Virus record (IMG/VR): IMGVR_UViG_3300043418_000072 | Span: 1 to 64,000 of that record | Direction: 5' to 3' (one strand) | Length of the DNA: 64,000 bases | Shown here: one piece after another, positions 7,278 through 14,678 of the stretch | How the letters are laid out: the number at the start of each line of letters is the position of its first letter | Position numbering within the stretch: the stretch's first letter is position 1 | Notes under the pieces: model-generated | What the model was told of the DNA's origin: nothing | Database searches by the model: none | What the model saw: only the letters and a program-made list of their open reading frames with translations | Made by a program: the position numbers and the translations under genes

Positions 7278-8510
7278 TTATGCCTTGATGCTAGTAGTAA
7301 AATAATTTGTTATTTGGGGCTGTTTAAGCCATTGCCATAATGTTAGCTTCTCGTACAATTCCTGCGTTAAAACAGGATCGCCTGGTAGCTCTAGTGCCTT
7401 GATGATTGCCTTAATTTCGTTGTCTATGTGTTGCTTGAACCATGTAGGGTCGCGTGGGTTGCTATCTGCTGGTGCAGGTTCGCTATGCTCCCATTTGCTA
7501 TATTGTTCAAGCAACCGTTTTTTAATATCTTGTGGTAAGTGTTGTATCTGTTGATATGCTGGACGAACTAACATGTTAGTCATTACATCAACTTCTCTTG
7601 ATACACACCAGCGGTATAAATCGTCTAATGTGTGTACACTCAGTGCGCTAGGTACTGCACGTACTGTAACATAGACGTGTCCTTGTTTGCGATGCTTTAG
7701 GTATAAATCAATATTGTCTAATACTGTTTGCGTACTCGAACCCTGTCGAATCAAATCGTTAAGTTCCCCGGTGCATTCAATACTAACACCAACGTCTACG
7801 TGTCTGAATGCGTTTAGTTTCTGCATCAGTGATTGATTAAACACCGTTCCGTTGGTAGTAAATCCTAGATATATGTTGTTCTTGCCCGCAAGTAGCAGGC
7901 GGTCAATTAGCTGTTCAAAGCGAGGGTTAAGTAAGGGTTCTCCACCTATTAAGTGTACAAACTCCAAGTCTTTTGACCCGCAGATGTAGTCAGTTACATG
8001 ATCCCATGCTTGTTGATCTTCAGTCCAGTTCATACGGGCAGCACCTCTAAAGGTCCCTGCTTTAATTTCTTGGACTGCAATCTTACTGCTAGCCATTGGC
8101 GTACACATTCTGCAAGCAAGATTACATTCGTTACCTAAGCTGATATGAAAGCTGTTAATACGTGGTGCAATATTTTCGTACTTGCGTTGATCAAATGTTT
8201 TGTAGAAGTTAACGGGATCAATTCCGTCTTTGTGATTTTCTTTAACTCGTTTGCTACTAGACCCCATTGCATCTTCATGATAACACATAGCGCACAGGGG
8301 CTCATTGATGCCCGACAATTTGTTAACACGGGCAGCATGTTGGTGTTCACTAGCAACCCACTCGGGTATAGTCATGATATGTACATTGTACTGTGCAGCC
8401 GCAGGCGTCCCATATACACGGTTGGGCTGTGCTCCACAGGTATGATAAGTGCCATCTGCATTGATATGCACTTCCTTCCATGGCACATTACAAAATACTT
8501 TATCGATCAT
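7278..8510 (-). CDS. Radical SAM protein with N-terminal twitch/SPASM-like Cys module
   Basis: CNLACRMC motif, GGEP and TTNGT core motifs. N-terminal FCNVPW...TC...CAMC. Confidence 0.88.
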   Translation of the reverse strand: MIDKVFCNVPWKEVHINADGTYHTCGAQPNRVYGTPAAAQYNVHIMTIPEWVASEHQHAARVNKLSGINEPLCAMCYHEDAMGSSSKRVKENHKDGIDPVNFYKTFDQRKYENIAPRINSFHISLGNECNLACRMCTPMASSKIAVQEIKAGTFRGAARMNWTEDQQAWDHVTDYICGSKDLEFVHLIGGEPLLNPRFEQLIDRLLLAGKNNIYLGFTTNGTVFNQSLMQKLNAFRHVDVGVSIECTGELNDLIRQGSSTQTVLDNIDLYLKHRKQGHVYVTVRAVPSALSVHTLDDLYRWCVSREVDVMTNMLVRPAYQQIQHLPQDIKKRLLEQYSKWEHSEPAPADSNPRDPTWFKQHIDNEIKAIIKALELPGDPVLTQELYEKLTLWQWLKQPQITNYFTTSIKA

Positions 8511-9450
8511 TTCTACACTTTATATTACAAACTTCTAACGGGAACAGTTCTAATCTAGTTAAAAACTCTTCCCATAATGGATCCGCAAGGATGTCAGACA
8601 AGGGTCGTGTCTTGATACTTAAACGATCGCGATACTTTTCGACAAAATCGTTTTGCTGATATCCGCTGTTGAACCAAGGACAGGGAAACACTAGTCCGTT
8701 AACGTTAATGAACATTTCCTTTTTCCAGTTCAAGCACTTGGCCCAACTATGCACATCCTTTTGATACTGGATATCAATTACCATGCCACGGGCACTGAGT
8801 GCGCCTTTTTTCTTTTGATAGTTAGGCACATTAATAACAATCTCAGGGCATAATGGATCGACCCCGTTAACTGCATAGCGACCGTCAAACTTGGTACTAT
8901 GCACCTCATTGAACTCGTCGACTCCCGCAGCCCGTGCAACTTCTTTGATCTCCCTGGTGTGGTGCTCGTTGAAGTTAAAAATAATGTAACTCCAAATGAT
9001 CCTACACGGCGACGCTGCACGTAGACTCTTGATACCAGCAATGATACTGTCAAAATTGCTATTGACTCGATATAGTTCATTGCTCGCTTGATCCCACCCG
9101 TCTACGCTAAATGTAACTGCATCATGCTCTGTTAGCATGTGCCCTAGTCGATCCCACCAGTCTACGCTCTTGTAGCTACCATTGGTTACAATCTTAACTT
9201 GTATGCGATTGAGTTTTAGATACTCAACGATTTCTAGGAACTCTGTTGCATAGATTGGATCGCCTACATCGCCGCAGAACAAGAATGTCTTCATGTTAGT
9301 TAGCATAGACGGAGGAAACGCCAACATGAATTCATGTAGCGTTATTTCTCTATTCAGTTGTTCGGGCTTTAATTCAGTACGAGGGCAGCGTGGACATTTT
9401 AGTGTACACTTGCTGCTGATCTCGATATGAATGTCTTGTAGGTTAAACAA
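8500..9450 (-). CDS. Radical SAM protein with C-terminal SPASM/twitch domain
   Basis: CTLKCPRC, GDVGDP, VTNGS, FSVDG. C-terminal C...GLVFPC...CNIKC. TTG start overlaps the gp46 stop. Confidence 0.88.
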   Translation of the reverse strand: MFNLQDIHIEISSKCTLKCPRCPRTELKPEQLNREITLHEFMLAFPPSMLTNMKTFLFCGDVGDPIYATEFLEIVEYLKLNRIQVKIVTNGSYKSVDWWDRLGHMLTEHDAVTFSVDGWDQASNELYRVNSNFDSIIAGIKSLRAASPCRIIWSYIIFNFNEHHTREIKEVARAAGVDEFNEVHSTKFDGRYAVNGVDPLCPEIVINVPNYQKKKGALSARGMVIDIQYQKDVHSWAKCLNWKKEMFINVNGLVFPCPWFNSGYQQNDFVEKYRDRLSIKTRPLSDILADPLWEEFLTRLELFPLEVCNIKCRNDR

Positions 9451-11215
9451 TGTCTATGTCTGTATTATAACTGGTGTAGCCGTTTTCCTTAACAACGTGT
9501 AATGTGTTGTTAACTCGGCCCGCTAACTCATCTTTGTGCGACACAAGCCAAATGCTCTTGTTGCTTTCACGACTCATCTTCTTAAGGATGCTTAGTGCAT
9601 TTTCAACACCACTGGTGTCCATGCCGCTGTCTACTAGCTCGTCAATGAACAACAGGTTAATGGGTTGATATAAACTTTCCCAAACATCACGGAACGCCCA
9701 GCTCAATGACAAAATCAATCTGTTACGTTCGCCACGTGACAAGTTGTCAAAGTCTAGATCGCGCCCTAGTTCGGTAATGCTAACTGATAAGTCGTTGTTG
9801 AATTTTACAGTATGCGGCAAGCCAATGCGATCTAAGTATTGTCCTAAACGTGCATTTAAGTAGCTCAAGTTTTGATCGATAATGCGCTTACGGATAAAGC
9901 TGTCTTTATTAGTTAACAATTTAAGCAAGAACTCTTGGTGCTCTTTCAAACTCACAAGTTCGTTCATTACATCGTATGAGATTTCTTCTAACGCTTGCTC
10001 ACTCATTTCTTTAATTTGCTCTGCATAAGGATCGGCTTCCTTTTCCTTTGCAGACAATTGGGCAAGTACGCTAGCCATACTGCTACGGTGTTCAAACGCA
10101 TCGCTTTCGCGATCGTAATAGACTTTTGGTTGCGCACCAGCTTCGCCAAATTCGGCTAAGGCATTCTTTAGTTCTACAATTTGAAAACCTAGAGCTTCAA
10201 AGTCAACGGTAACAGTTTCTAATTCTTTTAGTTTGGCTGCTAATTGTGTTTCGTGATTTTCATCATGCAGCTCGTGGCCACACGCATGACACTTGTGTTC
10301 ATGTAATGCAGCAACTTCTTGCTCAATGCGAGCGTAGAGCTTACGTTCACGGTCCTGATCTAACTCTGCACGTTTAAGGGCTTTGTTTAGCTCATTAATG
10401 TCTTTGACTTTCTGATTGTACTCGCTAAGTTCTTTGTGCGCTTGCAATTCAGCTTCGATGTCTAACGTGCTTAACTCATCAAAGGCACGTTGGAACTGTA
10501 GCACATCACGATCGTGGTGCTCTGTCCACATTTTCTGGCGTCTACGCAGACTACCAATCTGTTCTTCGATACGCTTGTTAGCATCGCCTACTGCTTTGAT
10601 GCGATATTCTTCTTGTGTGATTGCATCTTTAGTGGCTTTAGACAGTTCTTTCAATGACTCTGCCTTCTCGCTTAACAAGGTAATGCCCAACAACTGCTCA
10701 ATAATAGTGCGTTGATCATTGGCTTTGAGTGCAAGGAATGGTTCAGTGTAGGTGTTGAGTGCAAGGATATGCTTAAACATATCGTGGCTCATACCTAACA
10801 TACGCTCAATCTCTGCTTGAGTTTCGCGGCTGTCGCCTTGGGCCTCATCGGTAATTTCTTTTTCAGTACCTGACACAAAGAACTTCATAATGCCAGGCTT
10901 GCGCCCGCGCTCAATGCGATAGTCAATACCATCCTTTTCAAAATCAATGGTAACCAACATGCCTTTGCCATTGGTCTTATTGATCAAGTTATCTTTCTTG
11001 ATGTTAGTAAGTGCATTACCGTACAAGGCGAAGCTTAGTGCATTGATGATGGTTGTTTTACCTGTGCCATTACGTGCGCCAGTATCGTCGCCGCCTAAGT
11101 CTAAGTTTTCACCAAGTACTAGCGTCAAGTCATTGCGGTCAAAGTTGACGGCTTGCGTGGCATTTCCTACGCTCATGAAATTCTTCACGGTTAAATCTTT
11201 GATCTTGAAAGTCAT
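9443..11215 (-). CDS. gp46: Recombination endonuclease ATPase subunit (gp46, Rad50/SbcC-like)
   Basis: Walker A NGTGKT, coiled coil with CHAC zinc hook, signature LSRGE, Walker B LFIDE, H-loop VSH. Confidence 0.95.
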   Translation of the reverse strand: MTFKIKDLTVKNFMSVGNATQAVNFDRNDLTLVLGENLDLGGDDTGARNGTGKTTIINALSFALYGNALTNIKKDNLINKTNGKGMLVTIDFEKDGIDYRIERGRKPGIMKFFVSGTEKEITDEAQGDSRETQAEIERMLGMSHDMFKHILALNTYTEPFLALKANDQRTIIEQLLGITLLSEKAESLKELSKATKDAITQEEYRIKAVGDANKRIEEQIGSLRRRQKMWTEHHDRDVLQFQRAFDELSTLDIEAELQAHKELSEYNQKVKDINELNKALKRAELDQDRERKLYARIEQEVAALHEHKCHACGHELHDENHETQLAAKLKELETVTVDFEALGFQIVELKNALAEFGEAGAQPKVYYDRESDAFEHRSSMASVLAQLSAKEKEADPYAEQIKEMSEQALEEISYDVMNELVSLKEHQEFLLKLLTNKDSFIRKRIIDQNLSYLNARLGQYLDRIGLPHTVKFNNDLSVSITELGRDLDFDNLSRGERNRLILSLSWAFRDVWESLYQPINLLFIDELVDSGMDTSGVENALSILKKMSRESNKSIWLVSHKDELAGRVNNTLHVVKENGYTSYNTDIDIV

Positions 11216-11802
11216 TCTTTATATTGCCTCATTAAATTATCTTTCCATGGTAGCATTCTGAGATTGCTGATTTGTGCTGCTTCATGCGGACTCTGCCCTT
11301 TTTCGAAGCACTCTTTAATAGGGGTTATATGGTCTAATTGCCATCCACCTTCTACACCGCATAATGTCCTTGGGTAGTTATTAGGGTTAATTGCATCTTT
11401 ATGTTTTTCATACATCTTCTGACTAAGTCCGTGTACTTTTCTTGCATACCTAGTATATTCTTCGATATTTGGATTACGAATTGGCCTAAGCATCCCCTTA
11501 TACGATGGATTTTGTGTAAGCATCTGGCATCGTGGAGAACAAAATCTTTTTTTGGAGGCTTGGTTAACGGTAAACGAAGTTGAACAATCTTTACAAATGC
11601 AACTACGGGTAACTTGCCGTATTTTTTTAATATTTGGTTTTCCAGGTTTAGCTCCGATTGGGATAATGATTCCTTGTTGCTTTCTAAATCGATATACTGT
11701 TTGCGGGTGTATGTTTAGCAATTTTCCTATTTCGGCTGCGGCCAATAATGGGTTACTAATTAATTCTATTTCTTTTGTTGTGTAGATTCTTGCGTTAGCC
11801 AT
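11212..11802 (-). CDS. Putative HNH-type homing endonuclease
   Basis: N-terminal HTH-like region, CKDC/FCSPRC zinc finger, C-terminal WQLDHITP...NLRMLPWKDN. AT-rich, with its own late box and SD AAGGAG. Confidence 0.7.
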   Translation of the reverse strand: MANARIYTTKEIELISNPLLAAAEIGKLLNIHPQTVYRFRKQQGIIIPIGAKPGKPNIKKIRQVTRSCICKDCSTSFTVNQASKKRFCSPRCQMLTQNPSYKGMLRPIRNPNIEEYTRYARKVHGLSQKMYEKHKDAINPNNYPRTLCGVEGGWQLDHITPIKECFEKGQSPHEAAQISNLRMLPWKDNLMRQYKE

Positions 11803-11829
11803 AGAAATACTCCTTTGGGGTATTTACCT
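11212..11829 (-). mobile_element. Homing endonuclease cassette inserted after codon 10 of the ancestral gp46
   Basis: A relic gp46 start (MFKIKDLTVK, 11859-11830) sits upstream of the cassette and a second copy (MTFKIKDLTVK) sits downstream. The 17-mer GTTAAATCTTTGATCTT occurs at both 11190-11206 and 11837-11853. Confidence 0.7.
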
Positions 11830-11859
11830 CTTTACAGTTAAATCTTTGATCTTAAACAT
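11824..11859 (-). pseudogene. Relic 5' fragment of gp46 (MFKIKDLTVKR*)
   Basis: Starts by TAATG overlap with the gp47 stop. Nine residues are identical to the present gp46 N-terminus with synonymous codon differences. Ends at the TAA of the late box. Confidence 0.75.
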
Positions 11860-12875
11860 TAGAGGTTTCTATAGATATCGAGTAGTAGGTTTTTATTGAA
11901 TTTGCCGTTGTCTAAATTAGTAAGTTGACCAGTAACAATTTGATCAATTGATTCAAATTCAATATTGCCTTGAATTTCATATTCAGTTAAGTCAGTAACC
12001 TTAGCTGGGATAAGAGTAAGCTCGCGTAATTTGTATGTATCAACGAACGTTTCTTTAATAAACGTTGCCTCTTCGTAGCTGATATCAATGTCTAAGTTAA
12101 CACGGCAGTGCATACCGGGTTGCAACATCTTTTCAGTATGAGTGATAACGTCACTAAGTTGGAACACACGGTACTTGGGCTGATCTGGCCACGAATGATA
12201 TTCGGGATCCTTGCCCCAATCTAAGATAGTTAATCCTCGATCGTCGTCGCCGGCGTCTGCATAGTTGTGGGGGAACGCATTTCCGATGTAGGTAATGTTG
12301 CGTTGGGTTTGTCGTTTATGGAAGTGTCCACTAAACACATGACCAAAGCCCTGCATGTCGTCGCCAGTTAACTCACCGTGATCTGGCATGGCAACCATTG
12401 CGTTCATTAAGTAACCCGGAAGCTCAAAATGGCCAAACATGTATTGGCCCTTCATCTTCTTCAGCTTTTTATAATCGTCGCCTACAAGCCAAGGGGCAAT
12501 AGTGACATTACCGTCGCTAAACCAATCATTGCAGATTTGAATATTAGGGAGGTGCTTCGCCCACTCCACGCTCTGAACGTCACGTTTATCGCGATAGTAT
12601 AAATCATGGTTACCAGGAATAAAATACACACGTTCAAAATTTGCATTCAGATGCTCCAATGCTTGCAGGCTATACCCTAGTGTTAGGATGTTAATGCTTG
12701 CGCGGTTGTTATGCCAGTCGCCTAAAAACAAACAGGTTTCGCAACCTTCTGCTTTGGCTTTGGCTGTGGCCCACTTGACAAAGTTCAAACAGTCCTCGTT
12801 GTGTAGAGTGCTGTTTGACTTTAAGCCAAAGTGGATGTCAGTAAAGATTGCGGCTTTTTTAAATAAATTACTCAT
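11859..12875 (-). CDS. gp47: Recombination endonuclease nuclease subunit (gp47, Mre11/SbcD-like)
   Basis: Metallophosphoesterase motifs DIH, GDWH, GNHD and GHFH, directly upstream of gp46. Confidence 0.95.
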   Translation of the reverse strand: MSNLFKKAAIFTDIHFGLKSNSTLHNEDCLNFVKWATAKAKAEGCETCLFLGDWHNNRASINILTLGYSLQALEHLNANFERVYFIPGNHDLYYRDKRDVQSVEWAKHLPNIQICNDWFSDGNVTIAPWLVGDDYKKLKKMKGQYMFGHFELPGYLMNAMVAMPDHGELTGDDMQGFGHVFSGHFHKRQTQRNITYIGNAFPHNYADAGDDDRGLTILDWGKDPEYHSWPDQPKYRVFQLSDVITHTEKMLQPGMHCRVNLDIDISYEEATFIKETFVDTYKLRELTLIPAKVTDLTEYEIQGNIEFESIDQIVTGQLTNLDNGKFNKNLLLDIYRNL

Positions 12876-13816
12876 TCACAGATTTTTCGTAAATCGGTTA
12901 GATTAGTGGGTAGCATATTAAGATTGTACACTTTTAACCTAATTCCTTTTTTGCCAAGTTGATGTTGTATTACAGATTCGTCCAAAATACTTAAAGTATC
13001 CCAGTTAAAGTTAACAGTGGAATCGATATTTTGGATGATGTTATTAACTAATTGATCTTTGTTTATATGCGTTTGCGTAGACATCCAATGTGTATGTATT
13101 GTAGACATCTTATCTTGGTTCTGCAACGTATATGGTTGACCTAGCCATTGGATGCACTCACAAATTGTGTCTTCGAAATTTTGATAGAAATCTATTTGAC
13201 TAATTTTAAAAACATTTCCGGGGCAAGCATCTAACTTAGTTGGGTGCGCTGTTTTAGATAGTGACACTAAGTCTAGTCCGCTAAGTATTTCCCTGAGGAT
13301 CCATGCCGGGAGATGCTTAATTTGAGAGCTTGCAGCCTTTGAAGGCACCCGTGGGATGTTGATATTATAAATTTCCTTATACAATAAAGAATTTGCAACA
13401 ATCATTGAGCACACATGCCCCCAAAAAATCCCACCAAATGCAGCTCTAAAGAATGCGTTATTTAATTGCGTTAGTGTGTGCTCAGGGGACGACACTATTG
13501 AGATCATATGTAACGAATCTTCTCCAACGCAATCTACAAAATTTTTATAGTCGTTGGATTTCAATGGTGGGTGCATTAAGACAATATTCGAATTTCGAGC
13601 AGTGCCAGACCTGATACAAGATCTCCATTGGAAATAATCATCAATTGTTACACCGTTGTTGTTTTCTTTTCTAAAAATGTGATTGTGTGATGCATTATTT
13701 AAATCCAACGGAATAGGCATATTGCAGTATTCCTTGATTCCAAAGTAATTTAAGCACCACAGTAACCAATTTCCATGGTTACCAGAGTGATACAATAACG
13801 GAATAAGGTTACTCAT
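12872..13816 (-). CDS. Hypothetical protein inserted between sigma and gp47 (start 13816 preferred)
   Basis: AT-rich ORF coupled at both ends (GATGAGTAA and ATGA overlaps). The N-terminal YHSGNHGNWL loosely recalls sulfotransferase-like loops but is unassigned. Confidence 0.6.
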   Translation of the reverse strand: MSNLIPLLYHSGNHGNWLLWCLNYFGIKEYCNMPIPLDLNNASHNHIFRKENNNGVTIDDYFQWRSCIRSGTARNSNIVLMHPPLKSNDYKNFVDCVGEDSLHMISIVSSPEHTLTQLNNAFFRAAFGGIFWGHVCSMIVANSLLYKEIYNINIPRVPSKAASSQIKHLPAWILREILSGLDLVSLSKTAHPTKLDACPGNVFKISQIDFYQNFEDTICECIQWLGQPYTLQNQDKMSTIHTHWMSTQTHINKDQLVNNIIQNIDSTVNFNWDTLSILDESVIQHQLGKKGIRLKVYNLNMLPTNLTDLRKICE

Positions 13817-14678
13817 CGCCATCGTACCCTCCGCCGCCGCCACCGCCCATACCTTGACGAGTATAACTTGGGTTTAGGTTATTCATTTCTAAGATATCGT
13901 CTCTCAGATTCTGGTTACGCTTTTCGATGTTCAAGACACGAGTAAAACTGTTAGTGATAGCGGCAGTATAATACGCAAAAGGGTTCTGCGATTTGGATTC
14001 GTCAAACTGGAGTCCGATTTGGCTGAGTTGAAGTAGGGCTTGGCTTCGCATTTCGTCATTGTATGTGTATCCTCTCCAGTTAGAGCGTGTGGCGTAACGC
14101 TCGCATAATTTCATAAACATGTGCGCTAGCTTGCGGGTCATTGCGCCATGATCCTTGCTATATACGCCGTCTTCTAAGGTACCTTTCCAGTGGCTTCTAC
14201 CAACTACAACAGGCTCGCCTGCTTCGTTAAGTTTATAATGCAAGAATGGAGGAAAGTTACATTTGGTGTATTTGGTAGTTTTTGCTTCTTCGGGTTCGTC
14301 GTATTCGCTTAGGATTTCGTCATCCTCGTCTACCCATGCAGCAACTTTTTTGCCTTTTTTACTATCGTCAAGTGGTACATGCTCCCAACTCATTACCCTA
14401 AAAATAACGTCCGACTCGGCAATAGTGTCCAATTCGATTGCAAATTCATCTAGTTTACGCTTTGTGCCATCTGCGGTAGCTAGTTCATGTGCTGCTTTTG
14501 CTAAACGTTCTGCTCTATTAGTGCGACCTTCTAAGATATTGGCCTTGTTTAGTCTTTTCAAATCCGGTAAGATGATGTCGTAATCGCCATATTCTGGTTG
14601 AGTGTAGCAACAATAGGTGTTCTTACTTTTATGAATTTCCTTTAGGATGTCTTTGTTGTTGAGATAGTTGTGTTTCAT
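13809..14678 (-). CDS. gp55: Late-transcription sigma factor (T4 gp55-like)
   Basis: HNYLNNKDIL N-terminus and RSNWRGYTYNDEM...FDESKSQNPFAYYT...F region. TAAATA boxes precede the structural genes. Confidence 0.85.
   Translation of the reverse strand: MKHNYLNNKDILKEIHKSKNTYCCYTQPEYGDYDIILPDLKRLNKANILEGRTNRAERLAKAAHELATADGTKRKLDEFAIELDTIAESDVIFRVMSWEHVPLDDSKKGKKVAAWVDEDDEILSEYDEPEEAKTTKYTKCNFPPFLHYKLNEAGEPVVVGRSHWKGTLEDGVYSKDHGAMTRKLAHMFMKLCERYATRSNWRGYTYNDEMRSQALLQLSQIGLQFDESKSQNPFAYYTAAITNSFTRVLNIEKRNQNLRDDILEMNNLNPSYTRQGMGGGGGGGYDGDE

What the first reader, a model, noticed from the sequence alone, without database searches (positions are those of the whole stretch)
11186..11861. HNH cassette split the gp46 start and brought a replacement: fossil of the homing event and likely target site
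Seen: after the gp47 stop (TAATG overlap) the minus strand reads ATG TTT AAG ATC AAA GAT TTA ACT GTA AAG, then AGG TAA within a GGTAAATA late box. The working gp46 begins ATG ACT TTC AAG ATC AAA GAT TTA ACC GTG AAG. The two copies encode identical residues and differ at three synonymous positions. Inference: a cassette of late promoter, SD, HNH gene and donor gp46 5' end entered after codon 10 of the resident gp46. The junction (~11829) probably marks the recognition site, and the recoded copy may be immune. The cassette also puts gp46 under added late control.
Basis: partly seen in the sequence, partly recalled or inferred. Interest (0 to 1): 0.65.

Follow-up and report, generated by a model that had tools for sequence, protein, structure and literature searches.

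The report
Homing-endonuclease cassette that replaces gene start
A selfish nuclease gene has inserted ten codons into an essential recombination gene of a giant freshwater phage and keeps that gene working by bringing its own copy of the first ten codons; sister phages still show the untouched site, and the same design recurs in dozens of related phages.

Summary
On the minus strand, SbcD/gp47 (12875-11859) ends in TAATG. An 11-codon relic ORF follows (11859-11824) and stops inside GGTAAATA. Next come a 196-aa HTH/zinc-ribbon/HNH gene (11802-11212) and SbcC/gp46 (11215-9443). The 28-nt repeat (11856-11829 and 11209-11182) differs at three synonymous sites.

Sister contigs with 98-99% identical gp47 settle the question. 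L158 has the empty site, and the window is identical to it up to base 11829. L160 lacks the HNH gene but carries the cassette-type 5' end as a short conversion patch. A DNA contig from another sample skips exactly 647 nt.

This is not a single event. About 200 HNH homologues exist. Nearly all 66 IMG/VR loci place the gene directly upstream of gp46, and most full-length ones have a relic and a TAAATA box. Decayed remnants occur, and the HNH and gp46 trees disagree, so the element is mobile.

TAAATAY is the genome's most enriched upstream motif, and a gp55-like late sigma factor lies nearby.

Three things remain untested: the cleavage site, immunity of the recoded copy, and late timing. The design mirrors the end-replacing mobile ORFs of fungal mitochondria and is a new variant for phages.

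The parts
13809..14678 (-). gp55-like late sigma factor gene (context: this phage has T4-type late transcription)
   Evidence: phrog_12791 'sigma factor for late transcription' E 5e-75. T4 gp55 tblastn E 6e-6 at 14189-13917.
11859..12875 (-). SbcD/Mre11-like nuclease subunit (gp47). Its stop overlaps the relic ATG as TAATG.
   Evidence: Pfam Metallophos and phrog_100 E 1e-57. HNH-less relatives and PA5oct have the same TAATG or ATGA overlap directly with gp46.
11824..11859 (-). Relic ORF MFKIKDLTVKR*: the resident gp46 start codon and codons 2-10, cut off after the first base of codon 11
   Evidence: Identical to the empty-site allele of sister contig L158 through ...GTAAAGA. blastn homology ends at 11829. 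It aligns to the gp46 N-terminus of relatives.
11829..11856 (-). Upstream copy of the 28-nt direct repeat (resident allele: TTT ... ACT GTA)
11182..11828 (-). The 647-nt inserted cassette relative to the empty allele: box, hairpin and SD, HNH gene, new ATG plus ACT, and replacement codons 2-10
   Evidence: Homology breakpoints against L158/L160. A DNA contig of run X4 joins 11186 to 11834 and skips exactly 647 nt.
11821..11828 (-). GGTAAATA box: a putative T4-type late promoter that also supplies the relic's stop codon
   Evidence: 79 of 202 TAAATA sites in the genome lie in sense within 70 nt upstream of ORFs. The sense:antisense ratio is 79:21 and the next base is C or T, never G. The box is conserved 20-30 nt before the HNH ATG across the family and is a perfect TATAAATA in distant members.
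11803..11828 (-). Predicted hairpin pairing the box region with the SD region (AAGGAG at 11815-11810) of the HNH gene
   Evidence: RNAfold gives -5.8 kcal/mol, z -1.4 in the window. Relatives form stronger hairpins with different arm sequences (z -2 to -5). RNAalifold gave no alignment-based consensus.
11212..11802 (-). 196-aa HTH / Cys4 zinc-ribbon / HNH-like endonuclease gene (P0001)
   Evidence: phrog_5104 E 2e-22 and phrog_1271 HNH E 9e-5. Invariant C68/C73/C88/C92 and D157-H158...N180...N189 in 47 homologues. Fold matches: HTH Z 6.2, HNH nicking endonuclease 4h9d Z 5.9. The domain-only model hits almost only His-Me nucleases, weakly.
11227..11230 (-). GAGG inside the HNH 3' end: the likely Shine-Dalgarno sequence for the relocated gp46 start
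   Evidence: Read from the sequence. Decayed remnants always keep the last 17-47 HNH codons that carry it.
11182..11215 (-). Replacement gp46 5' end: ATG (overlapping the HNH TGA), an extra ACT codon, and the downstream repeat copy 11209-11182 (cassette allele: TTC ... ACC GTG)
   Evidence: The same ATGACT... signature occurs in HNH+ loci L086, L087 and L090.
9443..11215 (-). SbcC/Rad50-like ATPase subunit (gp46), 590 aa, intact
   Evidence: Pfam AAA_23 and SMC_N; phrog_77 E 8e-103. 50% identity to PA5oct gp46.

Best explanation
The 647-nt segment 11828-11182 is a mobile cassette built around a free-standing HNH homing-endonuclease gene. It sits inside the coding sequence of the recombination nuclease gene gp46 (SbcC/Rad50-like), one base into codon 11.

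The cassette keeps gp46 intact by replacing its 5' end. It carries its own copy of the start codon (plus one extra codon) and codons 2-10, fused to the HNH stop as ATGA. The gp46 ribosome-binding site lies inside the last HNH codons. The resident start and codons 1-10 are left upstream as an 11-codon relic. The relic is still coupled to the gp47 stop and ends at the TAA of the cassette's first element, a TAAATA box.

Inferred mechanism. In a mixed infection the nuclease cuts or nicks an empty gp46 allele near its 5' end. Repair copies the occupied allele, using gp47 and the relic as the left homology arm and gp46 from codon 11 onward as the right arm. This transfers the box, the HNH gene and the replacement 5' end.

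The box is probably a gp55-type late promoter. It is placed in the 5' arm of a hairpin that masks the HNH ribosome-binding site on read-through transcripts, as in T4 I-TevI and segB and Aeh1 mobE. If so, it would also add late transcription of gp46.

Shown: the insertion boundaries, the empty, occupied and footprint alleles, family-wide site specificity, mobility and decay. Inferred: nuclease activity, cut site, immunity, promoter timing and hairpin function.
For: 1. Empty site. L158/L159 (gp47 99% aa) have gp47-TAATG-gp46 with one copy. The window matches this allele exactly up to 11829 and again from 11209.

2. Footprint allele. L160/L161 lack the HNH gene. They differ from L158 at 6 bases plus the ACT codon, all within the first 47 nt of gp46, and are 96-100% identical to it afterwards. 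All seven states equal the window's working copy (48/50), although the rest of the window's gp46 is only about 88% identical to both.

3. Independent sample. A DNA contig in another freshwater sample skips exactly 647 nt.

4. Second pair. The relic of HNH+ L122 matches the gp46 5' end of its HNH-less sister L026 at 25/26 bases, while L122's working copy differs more.

5. Site specificity. Nearly all 66 IMG/VR loci found with the HNH profile place the gene immediately upstream of, and overlapping, gp46, even where gp46 is only about 25% identical. At least 14 distinct loci have a relic that tracks the local gp46 N-terminus and ends at the box. The relic occurs behind different upstream genes: gp47, DUF6071 and others.

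6. Codon pattern. Relic-versus-working differences fall 30/20/92 on codon positions 1/2/3. Both copies therefore diverged while coding.

7. Mobility and decay. HNH presence needs at least 14-17 changes on the gp46 tree. The HNH tree rejects a gp46-supported clade (p-AU 3e-61). Six loci keep only the last 17-47 HNH codons.

8. Protein. It has an HTH, a Cys4 ribbon and an HNH-like domain with conserved catalytic-type residues.

9. Promoter context. The T4 precedent for a late promoter combined with a hairpin that masks the ribosome-binding site is in PMC2988022.
Against: - No enzymatic evidence exists. Pfam HNH models are matched only below threshold (5 of 47 members, best E 0.024), and the fold matches are weak (Z 5.9; Foldseek E 0.4-3).
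- The working copy recreates the whole sequence around the insertion point, so self-immunity is unexplained. No nucleotide state separates HNH+ from HNH- alleles across the family.
- In the window itself the hairpin is weak (z -1.4), and RNAalifold found no consensus structure.
- 'Late' timing rests on analogy with T4.
- The window's exact parent is not in the data (flanks are 88-92% identical to the sisters). The relic could therefore have arrived with the cassette by co-conversion rather than being this genome's own former start.
- The RNA-library contig cannot prove transcription.
Confidence: 0.8

Rival explanations
1. One ancient insertion, then vertical descent. The HNH gene entered the gp46 5' end once in a distant ancestor and is now a domesticated partner or regulator of the gp46/gp47 nuclease. 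Its patchy distribution would reflect repeated loss by recombination between the flanking repeats, not homing.
For: The linkage to gp46 is strict even at about 25% gp46 identity. HNH and gp46 identities to the window are roughly correlated. Direct repeats would make precise loss easy, and L160 looks like a loss product.
Against: The HNH tree is incongruent with the gp46 tree (p-AU 3e-61). Sister pairs with near-identical gp46 protein (about 90% identical DNA) differ in presence (L099/L069, L122/L026). Relics match the local empty alleles rather than each other. Decayed stubs show the protein is dispensable. The third-position bias of relic differences is not expected for a pseudogene decaying since one ancient event.
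Confidence: 0.12
2. Passenger 'moron' at a recombination hotspot. The gp47-gp46 junction takes up many unrelated ORFs. The HNH gene would be one more, and the repeat a by-product of illegitimate recombination or slippage, with no role for the nuclease in its own spread.
For: About half of roughly 70 relatives carry unrelated inserts of 0.5-3.5 kb at this junction, many starting exactly at the coupled start codon. T4 itself has genes 46.1 and 46.2 there.
Against: None of the other inserts leaves a second copy of the gp46 5' end. Only the HNH cassette does, and in the window's phage group at the same nucleotide in more than 14 diverged lineages and behind different upstream genes; in the distant member L118 the junction lies about 9 nt further upstream. 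The inserted protein has a DNA-binding domain and an HNH-like domain.
Confidence: 0.06
3. Self-splicing or bypassed element. The relic would be exon 1 of gp46, and the HNH region would be removed as a group I intron or skipped by ribosomes, so that both gp46 starts are used.
For: T4 homing endonucleases often live in introns, and T4 mobA travels with a translational bypass element.
Against: No Rfam family matches 10900-12100 on either strand at E up to 1. Only 21 nt (11823-11803) separate the relic's stop codon from the HNH ORF and none follows it, leaving no room for an intron core. The relic ends in an in-frame stop. The working copy has its own start codon and ribosome-binding site and a full N-terminus.
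Confidence: 0.01

Closest known systems
Mobile endonuclease ORFs (mORFs) of fungal mitochondria that carry a duplicated gene end (Allomyces macrogynus atp6; Glomus atp6, atp9, cox2, nad3)
   Same: A free-standing endonuclease gene inserts inside a protein-coding gene and brings a foreign copy of the displaced gene end. [quoted passage not shown] The window versus L158/L160 shows exactly this pattern.
   Different: In those cases the 3' end is replaced and the relic lies downstream. The enzymes are of other families (PMC7487136 lists GIY-YIG and LAGLIDADG for fungal mitochondria) and are often fused in frame to the host gene. Here the 5' end is replaced: start codon, ribosome-binding site and 10 codons. 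The relic is a short upstream ORF, the enzyme is HNH-like, and the host is a phage.
T4-family free-standing homing endonucleases (seg and mob genes; intronless homing), with Aeh1 mobE and T4 I-TevI/segB regulation
   Same: A small nuclease gene sits between or inside conserved genes and is patchily distributed among relatives. It is inherited with flanking markers. Regulation combines a late promoter with a hairpin that masks the ribosome-binding site, and host-gene expression signals embedded in the endonuclease gene favour its retention (PMC2988022).
   Different: The T4 examples sit in intergenic positions or split the host gene into two polypeptides (Aeh1 nrdA, T4 39/60; from my own knowledge). 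None described in that review duplicates and replaces the host gene's 5' end ('duplicat' occurs 0 times). P0001 has no significant sequence match to T4 MobB or MobC. Those proteins match other loci of this genome.
T4 mobA with the gene 60 bypass element as a mobile cassette (Bonocora et al. 2011, from my own knowledge; paper not read here)
   Same: An HNH gene travels with extra sequence that keeps the interrupted host gene functional and is thought to protect the occupied allele from cutting.
   Different: The accompanying element there is a 50-nt translational bypass and the host gene is split in two. Here it is a replacement start and N-terminal coding segment, and the host gene stays whole.
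Unnamed HNH-domain ORFs between tail sheath (gp18) and tail tube (gp19) genes of cultured T4-like phages (Escherichia phage ECML-134; Sinorhizobium phage phiM19)
   Same: They share the C-terminal nuclease domain (28-48% identity over 85-125 residues) and a free-standing position between conserved genes.
   Different: The target locus is different, the proteins are annotated only as hypothetical, and no link to gp46 or relic is reported. No cultured phage in the collection has this gene next to gp46.

Membership tests
HNH (His-Me finger) endonuclease | Significant match to a curated HNH sequence model | tested here: inconclusive
   Pfam PF01844 is matched by 5 of 47 family members, and only below threshold (best E 0.024). 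There is no NCBIfam match. PHROG 1271 'HNH endonuclease' gives E 8.8e-5 and phrog_5104 (unknown function) gives 2e-22. JGI names several homologues McrA.
HNH (His-Me finger) endonuclease | Beta-beta-alpha metal fold with a conserved His general base and Asn/His metal ligands | tested here: inconclusive
   D157-H158, N180 and N189 are invariant in 47 sequences. The model's strands at 154-158 and 181-185 and helix at 186-193 fit the fold. The best structural match for residues 111-196 is the Gme HNH nicking endonuclease, Z 5.9, rmsd 4.8. The domain-only model (pLDDT 89) hits almost exclusively colicin, pyocin, Cas9, McrA and Gme HNH domains, but at E 0.4-3 and TM 0.3-0.45.
Free-standing homing endonuclease gene | Presence/absence polymorphism at one precise site among close relatives | tested here: met
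   The empty allele (L158, L159, L163), the occupied allele (window, L085) and the footprint allele (L160, L161) share 94-99% identical gp47. The difference is exactly 647 nt.
Free-standing homing endonuclease gene | Horizontal spread independent of host-gene phylogeny, with signs of decay and loss | tested here: met
   At least 14-17 state changes on the gp46 tree. The AU test rejects congruence (p 3e-61). Truncated remnants occur in L150, L153, L154, L155, L157 and L068.
Free-standing homing endonuclease gene | Co-conversion of flanking markers | tested here: met
   A roughly 40-nt patch of cassette-type states sits at the gp46 5' end of HNH-less L160, in an otherwise L158-like gene.
Free-standing homing endonuclease gene | Site-specific cleavage of the endonuclease-free allele and resistance of the occupied allele | not testable with these tools
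   This needs purified protein and DNA substrates. Sequence comparison found no universal resistance polymorphism.
T4-type late promoter (gp55-dependent, TATAAATA) | Match to the motif used upstream of genes in this genome, and presence of the late sigma factor | tested here: met
   TAAATA is enriched 8.7-fold upstream of ORFs with strand bias 79:21, and the next base is C or T. GGTAAATAC fits this motif. A gp55-like sigma factor is present. Distant family members have TATAAATA at the same position.
T4-type late promoter (gp55-dependent, TATAAATA) | Transcripts starting a few bases downstream of the box late in infection | not testable with these tools
   Only assembled contigs of one RNA library were available. 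They cannot show transcript 5' ends.
Group I intron carrying a homing endonuclease gene | Ribozyme core flanking the ORF | tested here: not met
   No Rfam match at E up to 1. There is no non-coding space downstream of the ORF.

The most novel reading that the evidence does not exclude
This may be a distinct, widespread strategy for invading phage genes: an 'end-replacing' homing element. It would enter an essential ORF without an intron or intein by carrying a substitute promoter, ribosome-binding site, start codon and N-terminal codons. Under this reading the retained relic is not mere debris. It would serve as a portable left homology arm, letting the cassette home into gp46 whatever lies upstream. 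It might also act as a leader ORF whose translation, coupled to gp47, opens the hairpin that masks the nuclease's ribosome-binding site. The element also targets the Rad50-like gene whose product resects the breaks needed for homing, and it may rewire that gene's timing.
Probability: 0.2. Interest if true: 0.8.

Novelty: new variant of a known kind. Interest (0 to 1): 0.62.

Why it matters
Homing endonuclease genes are thought to survive in phage genomes in three ways: hiding in introns or inteins, sitting between genes, or splitting a gene into two working halves. This locus shows a fourth way for phages. The element inserts inside an essential gene and carries a replacement for the gene's start.

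The data include all the natural intermediates: empty, occupied, footprint and decayed alleles. Some of these come from the same lake sample. This makes the homing cycle directly testable in an uncultured group of jumbo phages.

The work also defines a large, unnamed nuclease family (about 200 protein clusters) with one known target, the first 30-40 bases of the Rad50-like gene. That is useful for annotation, since short relic ORFs and truncated stubs upstream of gp46 can now be explained. It is also a possible source of new sequence-specific nucleases.

Tried and rejected
- Nucleotide searches of the cultured-phage collection with the locus found nothing. Relatives had to be reached through proteins.
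- No cultured phage has this gene next to gp46. The best cultured-phage matches lie in other contexts.
- The profile of the HNH family found no solved relative by sequence.
- Foldseek on the whole model gave no clear hit because the model has three loosely packed domains. A domain-only model helped only qualitatively.
- RNAalifold on 16 upstream regions gave no consensus hairpin because the arms are not in register. The hairpin claim therefore rests on single-sequence folds.
- An ungapped nucleotide search for relics was too strict for diverged loci and was replaced by a peptide comparison.
- I looked for a nucleotide state that separates HNH+ from HNH- alleles as an immunity signature and found none that holds family-wide.
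- No left-hand conversion tract could be seen in gp47. The last 48 nt are identical in all sisters and the rest is mosaic.
- T4's own 47-46.2-46.1-46 junction has no relic.
- Pfam gave nothing for the extra ORFs that interrupt gp46 in L090.
- An intron or bypass reading was rejected.


Full report
**What is there**

The window is the first 64 kb of a 354,098-bp IMG/VR virus record that CheckV rates as complete. Its gp46 is 50% identical to that of Pseudomonas jumbo phage PA5oct and 35-48% identical to those of Atu_ph07, Phosso and the Rak2-like phages.

The minus strand reads as follows:
- SbcD/gp47-like gene, 12875-11859. Its TAA stop shares an A with an ATG.
- An 11-codon ORF, MFKIKDLTVKR (11859-11824), whose stop is the TAA of GGTAAATA (11828-11821).
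- AAGGAG (11815-11810), 7 nt before the ATG of a 196-aa ORF (11802-11212).
- The TGA stop of that ORF overlaps the ATG of the SbcC/gp46-like gene (11215-9443), which begins MTFKIKDLTVKNF.

The 28-nt repeat (11856-11829 and 11209-11182) differs at three third-codon positions. It is unique in the window, with zero matches expected by chance.

**The inserted protein**

Pfam sees only a weak N-terminal HTH. PHROGs places the rest in an unnamed family (2e-22) and, weakly, in an HNH family.

About 200 full-length homologues exist in metagenomes, at 48-85% identity. Across 47 of them, four cysteines and the D-H...N...N pattern are invariant.

A confident model (pLDDT 86.5) has three parts: a three-helix HTH (Z 6.2), a zinc ribbon, and a C-terminal domain. 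The best structural match for the C-terminal domain is an HNH nicking endonuclease (Z 5.9). A model of that domain alone retrieves almost only His-Me nucleases, but with weak scores. I treat it as a probable HNH nuclease. Curated sequence thresholds are not met.

**The decisive comparison**

A search with gp47 found sister contigs with 91-99% identical gp47 protein.

L158/L159 (99%) and L163 (94%) have gp47-TAATG-gp46 with a single copy of the 5' end. The last 21 nt of the window's gp47 and its relic are letter-for-letter identical to L158 up to ...GTAAAGA. Alignment across gp47 (about 92% identical overall) stops at 11829 and resumes at 11209. This is the empty site.

L160/L161 (98%) also lack the HNH gene, but they start gp46 with ATG ACT TTT ... 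ACC GTG AAG AAT TTC. L160 comes from the same metagenome as the HNH+ contig L085. L158 and L160 are 96-100% identical along gp46 except in the first 47 nt, where they differ at 6 bases plus the ACT codon. All seven of those states equal the window's working copy (48 of 50), although the rest of the window's gp46 is only about 88% identical to either.

So two 5' alleles circulate. The window holds one as the relic and the other as the working start. L160 is a conversion footprint, or a product of cassette loss.

Laying public runs on the locus gave two further results. A DNA contig from a different sample and study joins 11186 to 11834 and skips exactly 647 nt. Contigs from two DNA runs of one sample (X2 and X3, possibly the window's own source) and one RNA-library run span both junctions without a difference. 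The RNA-library contig does not prove transcription.

**A family-wide design, not a private fossil**

A profile scan of IMG/VR with the HNH family returned 66 loci. In nearly all of them the gene lies directly upstream of, and overlaps, a gp46 homologue. This holds even where that gp46 is only about 25% identical to the window's.

Loci L086 (HNH 85% identical), L087-L089 (69%), L090/L091 (68%) and many others carry the same order of elements: relic, (A/C/T)GGTAAATA, Shine-Dalgarno sequence, HNH gene, ATGA, gp46.

The relic follows gp47 in the window, a DUF6071 gene in L087 and other ORFs elsewhere. HNH-less counterparts such as L016/L050 show the matching undisturbed DUF6071-gp46 junction.

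At least 14 distinct loci have a relic that resembles their own gp46 N-terminus and ends at the box. In 17 of 18 cases inspected by eye, the relic and the working copy differ in length by one codon.

Over 16 distinct loci, relic-versus-working differences fall 30/20/92 on codon positions 1/2/3. This is expected if both copies diverged as functional gene starts. It is not expected if the relic has been decaying freely.

In the pair L122 (HNH+) and L026 (HNH-), the relic matches the sister's gp46 start at 25/26 bases, better than the working copy does.

**Mobility and decay**

On a gp46 tree of 89 loci, built with the first 40 residues removed, HNH presence needs at least 14-17 changes. Sister pairs whose gp46 proteins are nearly identical (about 90% at the DNA level) differ in presence.

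The HNH tree rejects a clade that the gp46 tree supports (log-likelihood difference 100, p-AU 3e-61).

Six loci keep the relic, or part of it, but only the last 17-47 codons of the HNH gene (L150, L153, L154, L155, L157, L068). The retained stub contains the GAGG that serves as the gp46 ribosome-binding site (11230-11227 in the window). This explains why deletions stop there. It also parallels the embedded host signals that favour retention of T4 endonuclease genes (PMC2988022).

Among 71 HNH-less loci, none has a second copy of the gp46 start unless such a stub survives.

**Expression signals**

TAAATA-containing words are the most enriched 8-mers upstream of ORFs in this genome. Of 202 TAAATA sites, 79 lie in sense within 70 nt of a start codon, a region that makes up 4.5% of positions. 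The sense:antisense ratio is 79:21, and the following base is C or T, never G.

A gp55-like late sigma factor is encoded at 13809-14678. Distant members of the HNH family have a perfect TATAAATA at the position of the box.

In most family members the box region pairs with the Shine-Dalgarno region in a hairpin. Arm sequences differ between subgroups (z -2 to -5). In the window the hairpin is weak (-5.8 kcal/mol, z -1.4), and an alignment-based fold gave no consensus.

This layout matches the described control of T4 I-TevI and segB and Aeh1 mobE. Timing and function remain inferred here.

**What remains open**

The cut site is unknown. Free-standing enzymes can cut at some distance from their genes.

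The working copy recreates the sequence around the insertion point, so immunity needs an explanation. In the closest trio, four synonymous changes within 13 nt flank the junction (ACT GTA AAG AAC TTT versus ACC GTG AAG AAT TTC), along with the extra codon. No state separates occupied from empty alleles family-wide.

An alternative is that recognition reaches into the gp47 3' end. Its last 48 nt are identical among sisters that otherwise differ by 8-20%. This is speculation.

**Comparison with known systems**

The closest described design is the mobile endonuclease ORF of fungal mitochondria. It inserts into atp6, cox2 and similar genes, brings a foreign C-terminal gene end and leaves the native end as a relic identical to that of a sister species (PMC3630166). 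The phage case is the 5' mirror image, with an HNH-like enzyme.

Within phages it belongs with the free-standing seg/mob elements of T4-like phages. It differs in that it inserts in the ORF and replaces the gene start. The review of those elements describes no such duplication. Full-text searches found no report of a homing endonuclease tied to phage sbcC/gp46. Absence from that library is not proof of novelty.

I rate it a new variant of a known kind. The main correction is that the cassette is an old, recurrent design, not a one-off event.

Noticed in passing
L011-L081 (junction between gp47 and gp46); T4 locus L170:1982-2432: The gp47-gp46 junction is a general insertion hotspot. About half of roughly 70 relatives carry unrelated inserts of 0.5-3.5 kb there (DUF6071-like and several unnamed ORFs). 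Many of these begin exactly at the TAATG/ATGA coupled start that gp46 uses elsewhere. T4 itself has genes 46.2 and 46.1 in this position.
   Followed up: partly
window 13809-14678 (-): A gp55-like late sigma factor gene lies two genes upstream of gp47, so the gp55 ... gp47-gp46 neighbourhood of T4 is conserved in this jumbo phage. The 323-aa ORF between them (12872-13843) matches no Pfam or PHROG family.
   Followed up: partly
L090:1780-4783 and L134:2775-5149: In these relatives gp46 is interrupted a second time, about 55-90 codons into the gene near the Walker A region. L090 has a 92-aa N-terminal piece, a 366-aa ORF with no Pfam match, and then the rest of gp46. This may be another mobile element inside the same gene.
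   Followed up: partly
G000:C1:181387-181617 and 221116-221475 (outside the window): Two other places in the same genome match the N-terminal part of T4 MobB/MobC HNH homing endonucleases (E 1e-10 and 1e-5). The phage probably carries several unrelated endonuclease genes.
   Followed up: no
window 11859-11906 and 11829-11859 compared with L158, L160, L163: The last 48 nt of gp47 and the first 31 nt of gp46 are identical, or nearly so, among sister phages that differ by 8-20% elsewhere. This includes synonymous sites. The cause could be a conserved target or coupling signal, or homogenisation by repeated conversion.
   Followed up: partly
whole genome (G000), upstream regions: Besides TAAATAY, the words GCTATAAT/TATAATA and GTTGACCCGAAAT are enriched upstream of ORFs. 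They resemble the TTGAC and TATAATA promoter boxes reported for PA5oct (PMC7318152).
   Followed up: no
window 7278-9450 (-): Two radical-SAM genes (316 aa with a SPASM domain, and 410 aa) follow gp46. The sister contigs L158 and L160 differ here: there is a 115-137-nt gap after gp46 and a shorter first radical-SAM ORF of 268-275 aa.
   Followed up: no
L168:1785-2390 (Escherichia phage ECML-134) and L167:2207-2779 (Sinorhizobium phage phiM19): Cultured T4-like phages carry 'hypothetical' ORFs with the same C-terminal nuclease domain directly downstream of the tail sheath gene (annotated neighbours differ: a 'phage tail fiber protein' ORF follows in ECML-134, a Nos-D-like domain protein in phiM19). 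They are likely unannotated free-standing endonuclease genes of the same superfamily at a different target.
   Followed up: partly
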